A stretch of DNA of 64,000 bases from Styela clava (Eukaryota): the NCBI RefSeq assembly GCF_964204865.1, contig NC_135263.1:18228001-18292000 (forward strand). The letters are read 5' to 3'. Shown here piece by piece: positions 28,500 to 35,299 of this stretch; the stretch's first letter is position 1; each line of letters opens with the position of its first letter. The notes under the pieces were generated by a model. It saw nothing but the letters and a program-made list of their open reading frames with translations. It was not told the DNA's origin and did no database searches. Made by a program: the position numbers and the translations under genes.

Positions 28500-29034
28500 T
28501 TGCATACCTTTTAAACTTAAACATTCCAAAAACTTTATTTAATTCAACACAAAATTGTTGCGCGAAATGCAAAAAATCCAAACAGTTTTTAGATTCTCGC
28601 ACACACAGACATATCGCCAAAATTGGATCTACTACATTATTATTTCTACGCTGATTTTCATACCAGGAAAAATCTGCCGAACGGTTATTTAATCCATGGC
28701 AAAAATATAACTTAAAATTATTCTAACTAAAATAAATTACCACACAGAAAGGAAAAATATTAGACGCACAAGACCCTGAGCACAATCCGTCGCCATTTTC
28801 GCTACGTGACCACTTGGTGTCCGTAAACACAAAGAAGAAAAAGGGCAATGACGCATTAAGATGAGAAAAAAGTTATTTCAGCAGAAAATAGAAAAAATGC
28901 AACCCGGCAAATTGTAATTATGTACGAATTTTGCATTTGCTCTGTTCTTTCCAGGGGCGTATATTGAGGGGTTCGATTGTGTGCTTTTTTATTATTCTGG
29001 GTTTAGCGCTGACAAATCGAAGACAAACAATACA
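28500..29034. promoter_or_regulatory. Bidirectional promoter region KDM5 / POLR2C
   Basis: Head-to-head genes; locally CpG-richer; YY1-like CGCCATTTT at ~28791; - strand GT donor at 28506-28507 for a KDM5 5'UTR exon. Confidence 0.6.
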
Positions 29035-31578
29035 ATGCCTTACGCCAATCAGCCTACAATCGCAATCACGGAACTTACGAAAGACAATGTGAAATTTGTT
29101 ATTGAAGATACAGATCTCAGTGTTGCAAATTCACTCCGCCGGGTATTTATTGCAGAGGTGAGAATTTCTGATACCGGTAACCGAGAGGAACAGGATGGAG
29201 AACCCGGAGAGTTGGCTAAACCAAAGTTGGGTTCGCAGGTTCGAATCCCATGCAGGGATGGTTATGTGCGAGAGGATTGCTGGACTCCTCGCCGTCGTTG
29301 GGTGGTTCACGTAACCGCTGGTCGGTTACGACTTCCTCCACCACCAAGTCCATGCTTCCGAAAACAAACAATATAACTAATCCCATACCCGACTTGGAAT
29401 GGTAACCGGACGAGAGGCCGTGGTTCGCCATATGGATAAGCCGTCTTTTCGGTTTTCCTCTCCCCCGGGATAAATATGTAAATCCTATCCTATCCTAAAC
29501 TTGATATGAGTTTTGAACATGCCACATAAATGCACTAACGTGATGTAGGCAATTCAATATGAAAAAGCTGTCTTATCGACTATCCTCTCCCCCTGGATAA
29601 ATTTTGAAGTCCTATCTTGTTGTAACATAGAACGACTTAGAGATACCGTACTCCGACACAGTCTTTAAGGGTATACCGGTACCCTAGCTGCTGAATTACC
29701 TTATTTTTTTATTGCCCATATCGGAAGCCGTGGAGCCACCCTTTTCTGGCGAGGAGTCTAGAAATCCTCTTGCACATAATTATCTCCCACAGGATAATCA
29801 GAGGTGCGGTGGCGAGCGAATTTCTAATACTTAGCACAATAAATCACATTGTCTAGTCATACCCGACACTCGCTTTCTATTTGCTTCCATGGCCATTACA
29901 GTCGTCAACTCCTAAGCTATCCCAGAGTCATCCTCAACTTTTAACCTTTGCACATTTTAATAACTCATTCATTAATAACTTCATTCTTCTACCTGTACGC
30001 ATGCATGAAATACAAATGTCTATAAGCATGGCATAGACTCAACAATAAAGATTACTAGAGTTCATGTTTCAATCTTATGAACTGGACTATCGGTGAATTA
30101 AAAAGTAGTGAAGTGTTATCCATTCTAATATTCTATATGAGACATGTTTCTTTGAAAAATTGTTTGTTTGTTGTGACTGCCCGCCTCACATTACTCTATT
30201 TAAATATATTTTAAGGTTCCCACACTTGCGATTGACTGGATTCAAATTGAGGAAAATTCTTCAGTATTGAATGATGAGTTTTTATCACATAGGATTGGAT
30301 TGATTCCATTAACATCCGATGAGATAGTGGACAAAATTCAGGTAAATAGCAATAAGTAAAATTCAACCAAGCATATTTGAACGGGACCTATAGCCAGCCC
30401 ATGCGATTAGGTCATTTTGTCTGTTCTCTATCTCTCATTGTTCCTCATTCTATGTATCATACCTGGTTAGTTGATGTACTACGGTAATTAATACATAAGA
30501 TTATTCAAACCAAAGTGATCATTTTTTATTTTACTGAAGAACGTATTTATCCTGATTTCAGTACTCAAGAGATTGTATGTGCGATGAATTCTGCCCAGAA
30601 TGTTCAGTGGAATTTTATCTCGATGTCAAATGTACAAGTGAAAGCACGCGACAAGTTACTACTCGTGATTTAATATCCATGAATCCAAAGGTAAAATGGT
30701 ATTCTTGAAATCAAAATTATCCATTAGATGCTATTTTTTTATTTTATTTATTCTGCAGTTTCATGAGAAATACACATTTATTTATTATGGAATGAACAAA
30801 CACTATCTGACTTTTCTACCCAATGTCTCGGTCATAATCATATCCAAATATTTTTTTCCAGTTTAAAACATTCCCATTATTTTGCTGGCTAATAGTGATT
30901 GCATAAAACATAAACATTTTGTGTAACAAATGAATTGAATGCCGTTTGCATGTTAAACTAAGGTTGTTCCAGTTACATCGAGAAGTAGAGGAGACGAGGT
31001 TGAAAATTATGGAGAACAAGATGACATACTGATTGTTAAATTAAGAAAAGGACAATGCCTAAAATTCAAAGCTTATGCTAAAAAGGGATTTGGTAAGCGG
31101 GTTTCTTAATGTCTGTCTACTGTATAATGCTTTCGATGAGAAACATTCGTTGGATAAATGAAACTTCAATATAAATATAGGAAAGGAACATGCTAAATGG
31201 CAAACAGTTTGTGCATGTGCTTTCGAATATGACCCAGATAACGCACTTCGTCACACAACTTATCCAAAACCCGAAGAATGGCCTAGGAGCGAACACAGTG
31301 ATCTCACAGATGATGATGATAGACATCAAGCAGAGTAAGTTGTCGTGGCTTGGTTTTATTAAAACCACAATGAGCTACAGTAGCCATTAAATTTATTTTT
31401 GTTCAGATTTGATCCGAATGGCAAAGCAAACAAATTTTTCGTCAATGTGGAATCTACAGGAGCCATAAAACCAGAGAACATCATTCTGTCAGGGCTCTCT
31501 GTTCTTAAGAAAAAGCTCAGTGACCTCCAAACACAGCTAAGCCATGAACTGCAGCAAGATGGACTAACTATCGCATGA
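29035..31578 (+). CDS. POLR2C: RNA polymerase II subunit RPB3 (6 exons)
   Basis: [41 protein letters not shown]|[16 protein letters not shown]|[18 protein letters not shown]|..[14 protein letters not shown]|[18 protein letters not shown]|..[35 protein letters not shown] introns. Confidence 0.97.
29200..29497 (+). mobile_element. tRNA-derived SINE in POLR2C intron 1
   Basis: B-box GGTTCGAATCCC at ~29238; same body as the 27170 copy; (CCTAT)n tail. Further fragments at 29720-29840, 41455-41580 and 50640-50740. Confidence 0.82.
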
Positions 31579-31602
31579 TGATGCTGAGAAACGATCTTTT
31601 GG

Positions 31603-32704
31603 TCATAAAGTACCACCACCTTCTGCATCACTAGTTTGTCTGGCTTCAGGTGGATCTACATAGTTGAACATTTTAGGACCAATTTTTTCCAGATGATTTC
31701 TGCCACGTTGTCGCCAGAGTTTTTGACACATTTGTAATTTGATACATCGTCTGGCTGAACAGTTGTTGCACATCCTGTACCCATCTACAACTTTCCACTG
31801 CTCTTGTTTTAATTCTGGTGCAAGGACATTTTCGTTCTCGGGATTTTCCAATCGTTTGAAGATGATGAGTTCACCATTACTTTTTAAATGTGTCCCACCT
31901 ATGTCCTCTTTAGTTGGGAGGCCATTTGGAAATTGAATTGGATGAATTCTGAAAATTTGATGGTACTTAGCAAGTTAGCATACGACAATAGTCTGTATTA
32001 TTTGGCCTTCCTAATTGAATTTACCACCACGAGAACTGAGCAAAATCATAATACCTGATTAAATGTTTGACCTGCCAAAGTTTCTCATTATTATTTGCTG
32101 TGTTCATCTGCACTGAAATGTCATTTACCTGTGAAGAAAGAATAATAAAATATTAGGAATACTATTTATCTTATTGTAGTTGTTCAGGATTTTATGGATT
32201 TAAATACCAAATAAATTCAGACCAAAGTTAATTTGTAGCAATTGCAATACACCACTTATTGATGTCGGTTAAGGACTTTATTTTAATACCTTGTACAAAC
32301 CCATATCCTTCATTGCTTCTTTCTCCCAGTATGGGCGAAACTTCAGCTTGTGTATCTGTGTAACCATCCACAACTTTGGTGGTTCATCGAGTGGGTAGTC
32401 TGGATACATGTCAGTCCCTTTTTCAAACCTATGTATGGGTGGATATGTGAATCATCCATAGTTTTTTTTTAACTTAATCATGATCAGTATTTCTACAGAA
32501 TAAAAAGCTTCCTCTAAACACCTTGTTACACGCTATCATAGTTTGCATATGCTAGTTCACTCACCCCAATCTTTGCGCAGTTTCATCAATAGATGGTAGC
32601 CGTTCAGGATAATGATTCCTTCCCATCCTTGGCACTTTATTTAGACAACTTGACTTCTGGATCAAGCGCCTGCATGTCACCAATAACGAGTGGGCACTTA
32701 GCAT
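31603..32704 (-). CDS. MRPL30: Mitochondrial ribosomal protein L30 (uL30m), 4 exons, ~232 aa
   Basis: Exons 32704-32565, 32428-32290, 32128-32055 and 31948-31603 join in frame via GT-AG. Translation PPKLWMVTQIHKLKFRPYWEKEAMKDMGLYK..KLWQVKHLIRIHPIQFPNGLP..HLKSNGEL matches the MRPL30 motifs RPYWEK, VKHLIRIKP and LKSTGEL. Confidence 0.92.
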
Positions 32705-33501
32705 AATGTAAAAGAATACTGACTATGACAACTTGATGAAAATGATATATGAAGCAAAATAGGTAAGTTTGGCAGTGTAACATATAATGCAGAAAATGAA
32801 AAAAATACGGAACACATTATGTGATAATATGCATTTATTCACAATTATAATTTAAGCGTTATCGAGACCTTGAATGGATGAAAACAGGTTTTCCCTAACT
32901 AACACTATCAGGATGAATTTTCTGGAAACATGGAAGTAGCATCTGTATTAAATAAAGTGAATGCGATATAGAATTTGTAGTTGTGTGCAAAATTAGAACA
33001 ATTGACAACGAATAAGGTAGAAAAAAGTTGTTTTACAGCAGCAGGGTATTATTCTACATCGTCCAACACTTTGCTGATACAAAAGCGAGTGAACAATGAT
33101 TTTTAGAAAAGATAAGCAGTGGTTTAAAACATTTGATAAAGAAAAATCGCCTGTATAAAATACTGTTGCGAATTGTACATACAACAATGAAAGTAACAAA
33201 TGGCACAATGAATAATAATGCTGAAGGTAAGTTCCCAATATACAGAACAGAAAAATTACAAGATCTGTGCAAGAATATAAAATATCTCATGTTAGCAAAT
33301 ACATGCAGCACCAACAGCTGTTATCAAAAAAAAGTTATTTTCAGTAATAATATCTCACATGGGAGATATTTTTACGCCTGAGCAGTCTAATTTTATTAGT
33401 TTGGAATGATAATTTGTCAGATTTATTTTCAATATCTTCTTTAATAAGACCATGTTTCAGGGATGCATTGTAAAGTAATACTATCAAATTTCAGCACAGG
33501 G

Positions 33502-33661: not shown

Positions 33662-35299
33662 TCAGTCCTCAGCACTTTTTTGATGTGTTAATTCCAGTAT
33701 ACGAATCTGATCTGTGATTTGACTTTGGGCCCCATCTCCTCCCGGAGTCTGGTGCAATTCTATCAGTTCTTGACGACTGTCCATTTCGTCAGTATCATCT
33801 ACATCAAACTGCTTGTGTGATGGAGCATACACTGAGAGTACCAGGAAAACATAAATATTCCATAACCCATAAACTCCTGTGAAAAAGGCAGAGTTAACCT
33901 CAACACGATGATCTCCAAAATCCAACATTCCATCATATTTTTGTGAAAGTATGTAAAACACAATTGTAAGGGCAGCAGTAGATATTGAAAGTATCATAAG
34001 GAGTCTAAACCTGAAGACGACTGTCTTGAAATTGTTCGCTTGTATAGAAGTAATGAATCTCTGCTTGTATGACATTATGCGAAAAACTTTAACAACCATG
34101 TAGCACAGCAGTAGAAAATAAATGCAACCAGCTACACTGGCAACCACAATGAGAATCATTGCAAAGTTGTGGTGCGTCCAAACTGTGGAACAAGGATTCA
34201 CCAACTGCATCCCACGTTCAGCAATATCAAAAGCTAACAGAGCAAACAGAGAAATAAAAATAGCACTCAAATGAAAACGATATGTTGAAAGCTTGTTGCG
34301 TTGTGAAGGATTCACCATATGTTCTCCCGTAAATATAATCCAAAAACCAAGCAGGATACCATAAAAGAAGCCCTGGCGAATATCTGTGAAGAATAGCATC
34401 CAGGGAGCTTCTATAAATATCGAAATCAATTCAATAGGTATATTCAAGAATAGGATTGAAATTCCCAAAGAGAATATGGCTTTTTCAATCAGTAGAGGTT
34501 TTCTTTCAAGAAGTTTGATTCTTCTCCAGAACCAGATTACTGGGAATATCATTAAGACCGTCATAACTGACTTGAGACTTGTCCACACCTGAGTAAAGCC
34601 ACCATTTTGATGTATTGCAATCACAGACATTTCTTTTGCATTGCCGAACTGATTGTACATACCACCATCTTCAGTAACGTCAACCGGCAAACGAAGGTTG
34701 ATCAGATAACGTTTATGTGGAATTGAGCCCAACTGAAACAGGTGCAGCAACTCACAATCATACTCATAATCTTCATGTTCTTCATCAAAATCATGATTGA
34801 AATTACATTCAAGTATGCGATCTTCTTCACATCTTGCCAAGGTTTTCCACGCCAATTTATCTCTTCTAACCGCAGAACTGTCCTCATTACTGTACAATAT
34901 ATGAATATCCAAACGCATCGGTGCATGTGAAACATAAGGATTATTAGTTTTATATGTTATTTTCACTTGAAGTAGGGCAAGTAGGTATTGAAACCATGGT
35001 GTCATTGTCATAATTCCAAGATTCCTCGGAATATGTGCTATAAGAACAAGATCGCTAGGATCTAATCCTGTAACTTTGACGCCTTGAAGATCTGTAACTG
35101 GGTCACAATTCTGCCTAGTGACAACACCAGACTTGTTTCCTTCGGGTATACAATTTGTCATAATGTGTTCTTGAGCACGAGCTGGAGGAGGAGCAATTAA
35201 ACCACCAATCAGAAAAAATATGATTTGCACAACCAGAAGGAACATAAATAACATCACAAGCTTTCGGGTTGAAAGAATTTCAATAACTTTTCCCGCCAT
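33662..35299 (-). CDS. WLS: Protein wntless (Evi/GPR177/MIG-14), single coding exon
   Basis: MAGKVIEILSTRKL..FFLIGGLIAP, IHQNGGFTQVW, DIRQGFFY..FWIIFTGEH, ERGMQLVNP, NSAFFTGVYGLWNIYV..YAPSHK. Confidence 0.98.
   Translation of the reverse strand: MAGKVIEILSTRKLVMLFMFLLVVQIIFFLIGGLIAPPPARAQEHIMTNCIPEGNKSGVVTRQNCDPVTDLQGVKVTGLDPSDLVLIAHIPRNLGIMTMTPWFQYLLALLQVKITYKTNNPYVSHAPMRLDIHILYSNEDSSAVRRDKLAWKTLARCEEDRILECNFNHDFDEEHEDYEYDCELLHLFQLGSIPHKRYLINLRLPVDVTEDGGMYNQFGNAKEMSVIAIHQNGGFTQVWTSLKSVMTVLMIFPVIWFWRRIKLLERKPLLIEKAIFSLGISILFLNIPIELISIFIEAPWMLFFTDIRQGFFYGILLGFWIIFTGEHMVNPSQRNKLSTYRFHLSAIFISLFALLAFDIAERGMQLVNPCSTVWTHHNFAMILIVVASVAGCIYFLLLCYMVVKVFRIMSYKQRFITSIQANNFKTVVFRFRLLMILSISTAALTIVFYILSQKYDGMLDFGDHRVEVNSAFFTGVYGLWNIYVFLVLSVYAPSHKQFDVDDTDEMDSRQELIELHQTPGGDGAQSQITDQIRILELTHQKSAED

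What the first reader, a model, noticed from the sequence alone, without database searches (positions are those of the whole stretch)
31335..32215. Interlocked convergent genes: POLR2C and MRPL30 stop codons are 24 bp apart, and each first AATAAA sits in the partner's intron
Seen: the POLR2C stop ends at 31578 and the MRPL30 stop occupies 31603-31605, with no polyA signal between them. The first + strand AATAAA after POLR2C is at 32144 (another at 32210), inside MRPL30 intron 2; an ATTAAA variant is at ~32058. The first - strand AATAAAs after MRPL30 are at 31392-31397 and 31355-31360, inside the 72-bp last intron of POLR2C, the second within a TGGTTTT-ATT-AAAACCA hairpin. Inference: each 3'UTR is antisense to the partner's coding exons. 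This would be an obligatory cis-antisense pair with several hundred nt of complementarity between two essential housekeeping mRNAs (nuclear Pol II and mitoribosome).
Basis: partly seen in the sequence, partly recalled or inferred. Interest (0 to 1): 0.78.

Follow-up and report, generated by a model that had tools for sequence, protein, structure and literature searches.

The report
Tail-to-tail overlapping housekeeping gene pair
Two everyday genes of a sea squirt, one for an RNA polymerase II subunit and one for a mitochondrial ribosome protein, face each other with stop codons 24 bases apart, so their messenger RNA tails almost certainly run into each other, which is a common arrangement in compact sea-squirt genomes.

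Summary
The RPB3/POLR2C stop ends at 31578 and the uL30m/MRPL30 stop is at 31603-31605, leaving a 24-bp spacer. The first AATAAA on each strand lies in an intron of the partner gene. Contigs of three RNA-like runs from three studies confirm all eight introns in the laid stretch.

- The contigs carry no strand. Unspliced cover of the introns nearest the partner could be the partner's 3'UTR or the gene's own retained introns.
- The + strand AATAAA at 32144 has no RNA over it in 2 of 3 runs. POLR2C more likely ends after ATTAAA 32058 or CATAAA 31604.
- Nothing points to RNA editing. Of the 5 A>G or T>C differences, 4 are synonymous third positions.
- The hairpin is no more stable than shuffles, and AATAAA-free distances of this length are what chance gives.

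Convergent pairs with overlapping 3' ends are documented as common in the sea squirt Ciona (PMC1524920, PMC4528069). This is an ordinary new member of a known kind. Conservation in other ascidians could not be tested. None of the scan notes shown to me describes this pair.

The parts
29035..31578 (+). RPB3/POLR2C gene, coding part. Exons 29035-29157, 30216-30341, 30562-30690, 30963-31092, 31181-31334, 31407-31578 (stop TGA 31576-31578).
   Evidence: Introns 2-5 are joints in X1, X2 and X6. Intron 1 comes from the loose end at 30214, whose 30 letters match 29126-29155. Pfam, exon by exon, gives RNA_pol_L and RNA_pol_A_bac. The last exon aligns to residues 220-274 of the 275-aa mammalian RPB3, E 2e-19.
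31335..31406 (+). Last POLR2C intron (72 bases, GT..AG). It carries the two - strand AATAAA and the small hairpin.
   Evidence: Joint 31334->31407 in 3 of 3 RNA-like runs and absent from X11. The intron is also covered unspliced at depth 84.6/160.6/67.8.
31579..31602 (.). 24-bp spacer between the two stop codons.
   Evidence: It is crossed by the single contigs 31407-31952 (X1, X6) and 31407-31659 (X2).
31603..32704 (-). uL30m/MRPL30 gene, coding part. Exons 32704-32565, 32428-32290, 32128-32055, 31948-31603 (stop at 31605-31603). Exon lengths sum to 699 bases, 232 codons plus stop.
   Evidence: Three CT..AC joints in 3 of 3 RNA-like runs. Exon 2 aligns to uL30m residues 61-93, E 2e-5. The first 40 residues of exon 4 align to residues 119-157 of the 161-aa uL30m, E 3e-6. 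Exon 3 gives a weak Ribosomal_L30 match, E 0.03.
31604..31609 (+). CATAAA, candidate proximal poly(A) signal of POLR2C. It overlaps the MRPL30 stop codon.
   Evidence: Its use is not shown.
32058..32063 (+). ATTAAA, candidate distal poly(A) signal of POLR2C, antisense inside MRPL30 exon 3. T/GT-rich sequence follows.
   Evidence: Contig 31923-32084 runs unspliced through MRPL30 intron 3 in X1 and X2, and there is no RNA beyond exon 3 in those runs.
32144..32215 (+). The two + strand AATAAA (32144-32149, 32210-32215) in MRPL30 intron 2.
   Evidence: Depth in bin 32132-32215 is 0/0/10.2 in X1/X2/X6, so this is not the main site.
31355..31397 (-). The two - strand AATAAA (31392-31397, 31355-31360), candidate poly(A) signals of MRPL30.
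   Evidence: None of the 11 hexamers scanned lies on the - strand between 31398 and 31602. X11 has ATTT put in behind 31390.
31407..31952 (.). Stretch held as one 546-base RNA contig: the POLR2C last exon, the spacer and the MRPL30 last exon.
   Evidence: Records 4 (X1) and 17 (X6).

Best explanation
This is an ordinary convergent (tail-to-tail) sense-antisense gene pair produced by tight gene packing. RPB3/POLR2C on the + strand and mitochondrial ribosomal protein uL30m/MRPL30 on the - strand are both expressed and spliced as modelled, and their stop codons are 24 bp apart. No recognisable cleavage signal fits in the spacer. So at least one mRNA, and probably both, is cleaved and polyadenylated inside the partner gene, and each 3'UTR is then complementary to the partner's last coding exon. 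The extent probably varies through alternative poly(A) sites. POLR2C may end soon after CATAAA 31604 or after ATTAAA 32058, but not mainly at AATAAA 32144. MRPL30 may end at the AATAAA pair in the last POLR2C intron or further on. Shown: the gene models, expression, and RNA continuity across the spacer. Inferred: which strand the unspliced RNA comes from, the poly(A) sites, and the absence of any regulatory role.
For: Coordinates. Gene identity, exon by exon. Eight of 8 introns in the laid stretch appear as joints in 3 of 3 RNA-like runs from 3 studies, and in 0 of 1 DNA-like run. One contig covers 31407-31952 in X1 and X6, and 31407-31659 in X2, where the break coincides with variant positions 31660 and 31699. 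With assembly words of about 31 letters (the tool's bridging rule), transcripts cut on both sides within the 24-bp spacer would not join into one contig. The introns next to the partner are covered by unspliced contigs. POLR2C introns 5 and 4 are covered in 3 of 3 runs and intron 3 in 2 of 3. MRPL30 intron 3 is covered in 2 of 3. The far introns are not covered: POLR2C intron 2 in 0 of 3, MRPL30 intron 1 in 0 of 3, and MRPL30 intron 2 in 0 of 2, with a low-depth partial contig in X6. No listed hexamer lies on the - strand between the MRPL30 stop and 31397. The locus is single copy in its genome. No Rfam family lies in 28800-33400 to explain the intron cover. Literature: the convergent class is prevalent in sea squirt (PMC1524920, passages). 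In Ciona, back-to-back genes overlap in their 3'UTRs because of gene density, and 476 EST clusters were split for this reason (PMC4528069, passages).
Against: All runs are contigs without strand, ends or local depth, and no poly(A) loose end was reported (tables 6 and 7). The unspliced cover can equally be the genes' own last introns left in. In X2 the MRPL30 intron 3 joint (222.1) plus the unspliced contig (160.4) sums to 382, close to the 403.5 of the upstream MRPL30 exons, which fits intron retention well. X6 shows no contig over MRPL30 intron 3, though POLR2C is expressed there. Cover of POLR2C intron 4, and in 2 runs intron 3, lies beyond both - strand AATAAA, which a simple 'MRPL30 ends at the first AATAAA' model does not predict. 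Continuity across the spacer could rest on a minority of read-through molecules. The tool itself warns that contig depth cannot rank parts of a gene and that a hole proves nothing.
Confidence: 0.7

Rival explanations
1. Minimal overlap. POLR2C is cleaved some 15-30 bases after CATAAA 31604, and MRPL30 is cleaved not far beyond its stop through a signal not on my list. The mRNAs then share only tens of bases. The unspliced contigs are incompletely spliced last introns of each gene's own transcripts.
For: CATAAA lies 26 bases after the POLR2C stop. In X2, joint plus unspliced depth at MRPL30 intron 3 (382) matches the upstream exons (403.5). X6 has no cover of MRPL30 intron 3. Cover of POLR2C introns 4 and 3 lies beyond the - strand AATAAA pair and rises toward the 3' end, as late-spliced introns would.
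Against: None of the 11 hexamers scanned lies on the - strand between 31398 and 31602. In X1 the unspliced contig over MRPL30 intron 3 (171.4) exceeds the spliced joint (118.1), while MRPL30 introns 1 and 2 have depth 0, which would be an odd pattern for retention. Depths are contig means, so this argument is weak in both directions.
Confidence: 0.2
2. A functional antisense couple. The complementary 3' parts form double-stranded RNA, or the converging polymerases interfere with each other. The output of a nuclear transcription subunit and of a mitoribosome protein would then be tied together, through small RNAs, editing, duplex-dependent stability or transcriptional interference.
For: Both genes are expressed in the same bulk samples in 3 of 3 RNA-like runs, and RNA is continuous over the shared stretch. 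[quoted passage not shown]
Against: No sign of editing. The 5 differences between the RNA-like runs and the window within 31407-31952 are all A>G or T>C. However, 4 of the 5 are synonymous third positions of MRPL30 codons, and 2 are fixed in all three studies, as polymorphisms would be. No small-RNA data were available. Conservation of the arrangement could not be tested. Overlap of this kind is frequent in ascidians without any known function (PMC4528069).
Confidence: 0.07
3. Mis-modelled genes: one of the two stops is not the real end of the coding sequence, for example through a missed splice. The genes would then not be this close.
For: The MRPL30 reading frame runs about 74 residues beyond the end of the 161-aa mammalian uL30m, which could suggest a false extension.
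Against: The only joints in the stretch are the eight expected introns, and none lies inside 31407-31948. The extension is shared with the 230-aa Clavelina lepadiformis uL30m (58% identity over residues 1-103 of the exon) and with a 165-aa unnamed protein. The POLR2C exon ends where mammalian RPB3 ends.
Confidence: 0.02

Closest known systems
Convergent (tail-tail) sense-antisense gene pairs of the sea squirt Ciona (Zhang et al. 2006, PMC1524920; Gilchrist et al. 2015, PMC4528069)
   Same: Two protein-coding genes on opposite strands overlap by their last exons or 3'UTRs in a gene-dense ascidian genome. Unstranded assemblies merge them into one cluster, as the contig 31407-31952 does here.
   Different: This particular pair is not named in those passages. 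Here the coding sequences themselves are only 24 bp apart, so the overlap reaches coding exons and introns, not only UTRs. The exact sea-squirt percentages are in a supplementary table that I could not open.
Yeast convergent genes with overlapping 3'UTRs (PMC3900390; bioRxiv 10.1101/551689, also held as PMC6993858)
   Same: Short intergenic distance between convergent genes gives complementary mRNA 3' ends.
   Different: In yeast, interference and mRNA duplexes were tested by experiment. Here nothing beyond co-expression in bulk RNA is shown, and the genes have introns.
TR-alpha / Rev-erb-alpha antisense overlap in mammals (PMC4569393, abstract in listing)
   Same: [quoted passage not shown]
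   Different: There the overlap regulates alternative splicing of one partner. No alternative splice form was seen here, apart from a second joint at POLR2C intron 4 that differs by one letter.
Arabidopsis convergent pairs sharing a polyadenylation region (PMC3032780, abstract in listing)
   Same: Convergent coding genes with 3' overlap and poly(A) sites inside the partner.
   Different: This is a plant system with mapped poly(A) sites. Here no poly(A) site has been mapped.

Membership tests
Convergent (tail-to-tail) cis-natural antisense pair | Two genes on opposite strands of one locus, 3' ends facing | tested here: met
   Stops at 31576-31578 (+) and 31605-31603 (-). Splice ends are GT..AG for one gene and CT..AC for the other.
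Convergent (tail-to-tail) cis-natural antisense pair | Both genes transcribed | tested here: met
   Spliced joints of both genes in 3 of 3 RNA-like runs from 3 studies and none in the DNA-like run. The runs are labelled 'RNA?' by the tool. The joints and the empty introns are what show they are RNA.
Convergent (tail-to-tail) cis-natural antisense pair | Mature transcripts share complementary sequence | tested here: inconclusive
   Contigs cross the spacer unbroken and the introns nearest the partner are covered. There is no strand, no poly(A) end and no local depth.
Convergent (tail-to-tail) cis-natural antisense pair | A consequence of the overlap (editing, small RNAs, mutual regulation); needed only for a 'functional' NAT | tested here: not met
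   Editing only: 4 of the 5 A>G or T>C differences are synonymous third positions, as polymorphisms would be. Small RNAs and regulation were not testable with these tools.
RNA polymerase II subunit RPB3 (POLR2C) | Rpb3/Rpb11 dimerisation domain split by the Rpb3/RpoA insert domain, with an RPB3-type C-terminus | tested here: met
   Exon by exon: RNA_pol_L in exons 1 and 6, RNA_pol_A_bac in exons 3 and 4 (single exons mostly score below Pfam's whole-protein cut-off). The last exon matches RPB3 residues 220-274, E 2e-19, and matches RPAC1 of Pol I/III only at E 0.02 or worse. The joined protein was not searched.
Mitochondrial ribosomal protein uL30m (MRPL30) | L30 fold region and the uL30m-specific segment after it | tested here: met
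   Exon 2 matches uL30m residues 61-93. Exon 3 matches Ribosomal_L30 positions 29-51, E 0.03. Exon 4 matches uL30m residues 119-157. The nearest named relative is labelled uL30m in Clavelina lepadiformis. The joined protein was not searched.

The most novel reading that the evidence does not exclude
The 24-bp spacing forces every POLR2C and MRPL30 mRNA to carry the other's coding sequence in antisense. The cell could use this (duplex formation, small RNAs or polymerase collision) to couple the supply of a core nuclear transcription subunit to that of a mitoribosome protein. If so, the arrangement should be kept across ascidians.
Probability: 0.06. Interest if true: 0.55.

Novelty: new member of a known kind. 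Interest (0 to 1): 0.2.

Why it matters
That would make a convenient natural case for asking whether such overlaps have any cost or use in a chordate with a compact genome. As it stands, the main value is for annotation. Unstranded assemblies will fuse these two genes. Their 3'UTRs should be modelled inside the partner gene. AATAAA alone is a poor guide to their 3' ends.

Tried and rejected
- **Editing.** The five differences between the RNA-like runs and the window inside 31407-31952 are all A>G or T>C, which looked at first like A-to-I editing of both strands. One search showed that 4 of the 5 are synonymous third positions of MRPL30 codons. Two are fixed in all three studies while the DNA-like run carries the window's letters. 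I read them as polymorphisms.
- **Hairpin.** It is not supported.
- **Stable intronic RNA as the cause of intron cover.** There were 0 Rfam matches at E up to 1 in 28800-33400 and 0 tRNA genes.
- **Depth arithmetic to separate antisense UTR from intron retention.** It gave conflicting answers. X1 favours antisense and X2 fits retention. I dropped it because each depth is a contig mean.
- **Conservation in other ascidians.**
  - The word search with MRPL30 exon 4 found no candidate (it sees only proteins of 63-199 aa).
  - The exhaustive search gave 6 proteins.
  - Two metagenome scans found no relative.
- **Protein Atlas for the MRPL30 tail.** It does not hold the sequence.
- **Literature.**
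  - No paper holds MRPL30, POLR2C and antisense together.
  - The Styela clava search listed 10 of 45 papers, none on this topic.
  - The search for ascidian poly(A) signal usage returned only non-ascidian papers.
  - Supplements are closed, so Supplementary Table 1E of PMC1524920, with the sea-squirt class percentages, was not seen.
Full report
**What is in the sequence.**
- On the + strand a reading frame ends ...GLTIA-TGA, with the stop at 31576-31578.
- On the - strand a reading frame ends ...GGGTL-TGA, with the stop at 31605-31603.
- The spacer 31579-31602 is 24 bases.
- + strand AATAAA lies at 32144 and 32210, and ATTAAA at 32058. - strand AATAAA lies at 31392-31397 and 31355-31360.
- None of the 15 hexamers I scanned (a recalled list) lies in the spacer on either strand. 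On the - strand, none of the 11 scanned lies between 31398 and 31602.
- The window has 36% G+C and 196 AATAAA on both strands. From a random position the next AATAAA is at least 565 bases away in 48% of cases (+ strand) and at least 190 bases away in 75% (- strand). So the hexamer distances are what chance gives. The close stops are the real feature.

- + gene: exon 1 and the last exon hit the Rpb3/Rpb11 dimerisation domain, and exons 3 and 4 hit the Rpb3/RpoA insert domain. The last exon aligns to residues 220-274 of the 275-residue mammalian RPB3 at E 2e-19.
- - gene: exon 2 aligns to residues 61-93 of mammalian uL30m. Exon 3 matches the end of the L30 model weakly (E 0.03). The first 40 residues of the last exon align to residues 119-157 of the 161-residue uL30m.
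- The - strand frame then continues for about 74 more residues. This tail is real. The exhaustive protein search found 6 proteins at E up to 0.001. The best is a 230-residue protein of Clavelina lepadiformis that one source labels uL30m. It shares the tail, including four cysteines that are invariant in the 3-sequence alignment A2.
- The locus is single copy in its 377-Mb assembly.
- Other agents' notes call this genome Styela clava. I did not test that.

**RNA evidence: runs and gene models.**
- One search for runs listed 16 runs, of which 14 hold the stretch. I laid four on 30200-32700: X1, X2 and X6, guessed to be RNA and from three studies, and X11, kind unknown and DNA-like.
- All are Logan contigs, so there is no strand, no read ends and only one depth figure per contig.
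- X1, X2 and X6 are clearly RNA. All eight introns in the stretch appear as joints in 3 of 3 of them and in 0 of 1 for X11, which holds the whole stretch as one unspliced piece. Several introns also have depth 0 in them.
- The joints fix these models:
  - POLR2C exons: 30216-30341, 30562-30690, 30963-31092, 31181-31334, 31407-31578.
  - MRPL30 exons: 32704-32565, 32428-32290, 32128-32055, 31948-31603.
- POLR2C exon 1 (29035-29157) is tied in by the loose end at 30214, whose 30 letters match 29126-29155.
- ATTAAA 32058 lies inside MRPL30 exon 3, not in an intron.

**Do the transcripts overlap?**
- A single 546-base contig covers 31407-31952 in X1 and X6. That is the POLR2C last exon, the spacer and the MRPL30 last exon. 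In X2 a contig covers 31407-31659, and the break coincides with variant positions 31660 and 31699.
- These assemblies need shared words of about 31 letters. If both mRNAs ended inside the 24-base spacer, they could not be joined. So at least some molecules of at least one gene run well into the partner. A minority of read-through molecules could still provide the bridge.
- Unspliced contigs cover exactly the introns nearest the partner (depths as X1/X2/X6):

| Intron | Depth X1/X2/X6 | Runs covered |
|---|---|---|
| POLR2C intron 5 | 84.6/160.6/67.8 | 3 of 3 |
| POLR2C intron 4 | 99.3/136.4/76.4 | 3 of 3 |
| POLR2C intron 3 | 43.1/31.1/0 | 2 of 3 |
| POLR2C intron 2 | 0/0/0 | 0 of 3 |
| MRPL30 intron 3 | 171.4/160.4/0 | 2 of 3 |
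| MRPL30 intron 2 | 0/0/10.2 | only a low-depth partial contig in X6 |
| MRPL30 intron 1 | 0/0/0 | 0 of 3 |

- This is the pattern expected if each gene's 3'UTR or read-through fades into the partner. It is also the pattern expected if each gene's last introns are the slowest to be removed. Without strand the two cannot be separated.
- Depth sums do not help. In X1 the unspliced contig over MRPL30 intron 3 (171.4) exceeds the spliced joint (118.1), which looks like POLR2C RNA. In X2 the joint plus the unspliced contig (382) equals the upstream MRPL30 exons (403.5), which looks like retention. The tool warns against using contig depth in this way.
- No Rfam family and no tRNA gene explains the intron cover.

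**Which signals are used.**
- The bin holding the first + strand AATAAA (32132-32215) has depth 0 in X1 and X2 and 10.2 in X6, against about 92-510 for the joints. So POLR2C does not mainly end there.
- If it runs through MRPL30 intron 3, the best candidate is ATTAAA 32058, which is followed by T/GT-rich sequence. The cleavage site would be hidden inside MRPL30 exon 3. The short alternative is CATAAA 31604.
- For MRPL30, the AATAAA pair in the last POLR2C intron gives the first candidates. Unspliced cover continues beyond them into intron 4 in 3 of 3 runs. So either they are leaky or that cover is POLR2C's own.
- No poly(A) loose ends were reported (tables 6 and 7), so no 3' end is mapped.

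**Consequences of overlap.**
- Within 31407-31952 the RNA-like runs differ from the window at five places, all A>G or T>C. That would fit editing of both strands.
- However, 4 of the 5 are synonymous third positions of MRPL30 codons. Two are fixed in all three studies.
- The DNA-like run carries the window's letters at all five places. It may come from the sequenced individual itself.
- I read these differences as polymorphisms under purifying selection.
- The small hairpin is present, but the intron folds no better than shuffles (z = -1.39). The minimum-energy fold uses other pairs. Its closing base is polymorphic.

**Comparison with what is known.**
- Zhang et al. [quoted passage not shown] The exact percentages are in a supplement I could not open.
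- Gilchrist et al. 2015 (PMC4528069; passages read) state that, because of gene density, Ciona back-to-back genes may overlap in their 3'UTRs. EST clusters therefore merged, and 476 clusters were split.
- Yeast, Arabidopsis and the TR-alpha/Rev-erb-alpha overlap are further examples (abstracts in listings).
- No paper holds MRPL30, POLR2C and antisense together.
- The pair is thus a new member of a well-known kind. It is at the tight end, since coding sequence, not just UTR, is involved.

**What could not be done.**
- Strand-resolved reads and mapped poly(A) sites.

**Verdict.** The explanation is ordinary, and the interest is low.

Noticed in passing
window 31603-31825 (- strand): The MRPL30 reading frame runs about 74 residues beyond the end of mammalian uL30m. 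The tail carries four cysteines (C-x2-C-x4-C-x5-C) and a following stretch that are invariant in the alignment with the Clavelina lepadiformis uL30m and a 165-aa unnamed marine protein. A 220-aa unnamed protein has the tail without the cysteines. It could be a metal-binding addition to the tunicate mitoribosome. No Pfam family fits.
   Followed up: partly
window 32287-32700 and upstream (- strand): In X1 (record 6, 2991 bases) and X6 (record 19, 2780 bases), MRPL30 exons 1-2 sit at the end of contigs that carry about 2.5-2.6 kb more upstream sequence. The X6 loose end at 32697 reads on like the genomic sequence, with a few differences. The 545-aa ORF at 33662-35299 is the upstream gene. I could not lay reads there.
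   Followed up: partly
window 31091-31183: Two joints, both skipping 88 bases, are seen at POLR2C intron 4 in all three RNA-like runs: 31092/31181 with GT..AG, and 31094/31183 with AA..GA. The resulting sequences differ by one letter, so this is probably an allele or an alignment variant rather than alternative splicing.
   Followed up: no
window 31390: The DNA-like run X11 has ATTT put in behind 31390, directly beside the - strand AATAAA at 31392-31397. The candidate poly(A) signal region of MRPL30 is therefore length-polymorphic.
   Followed up: no
window 29160-29900: POLR2C intron 1 (29158-30215) holds G+C-richer segments that give similar peptide strings in several ORFs, for example around 29195-29431 and 29709-29837. 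They look like copies of a short interspersed repeat. ARAGORN finds no tRNA gene and Rfam finds nothing.
   Followed up: partly
window 29170-29180: The motif TACCGGTA lies a few bases after the first POLR2C splice donor, as described in another first-reader note on this window (s1-813377).
   Followed up: no
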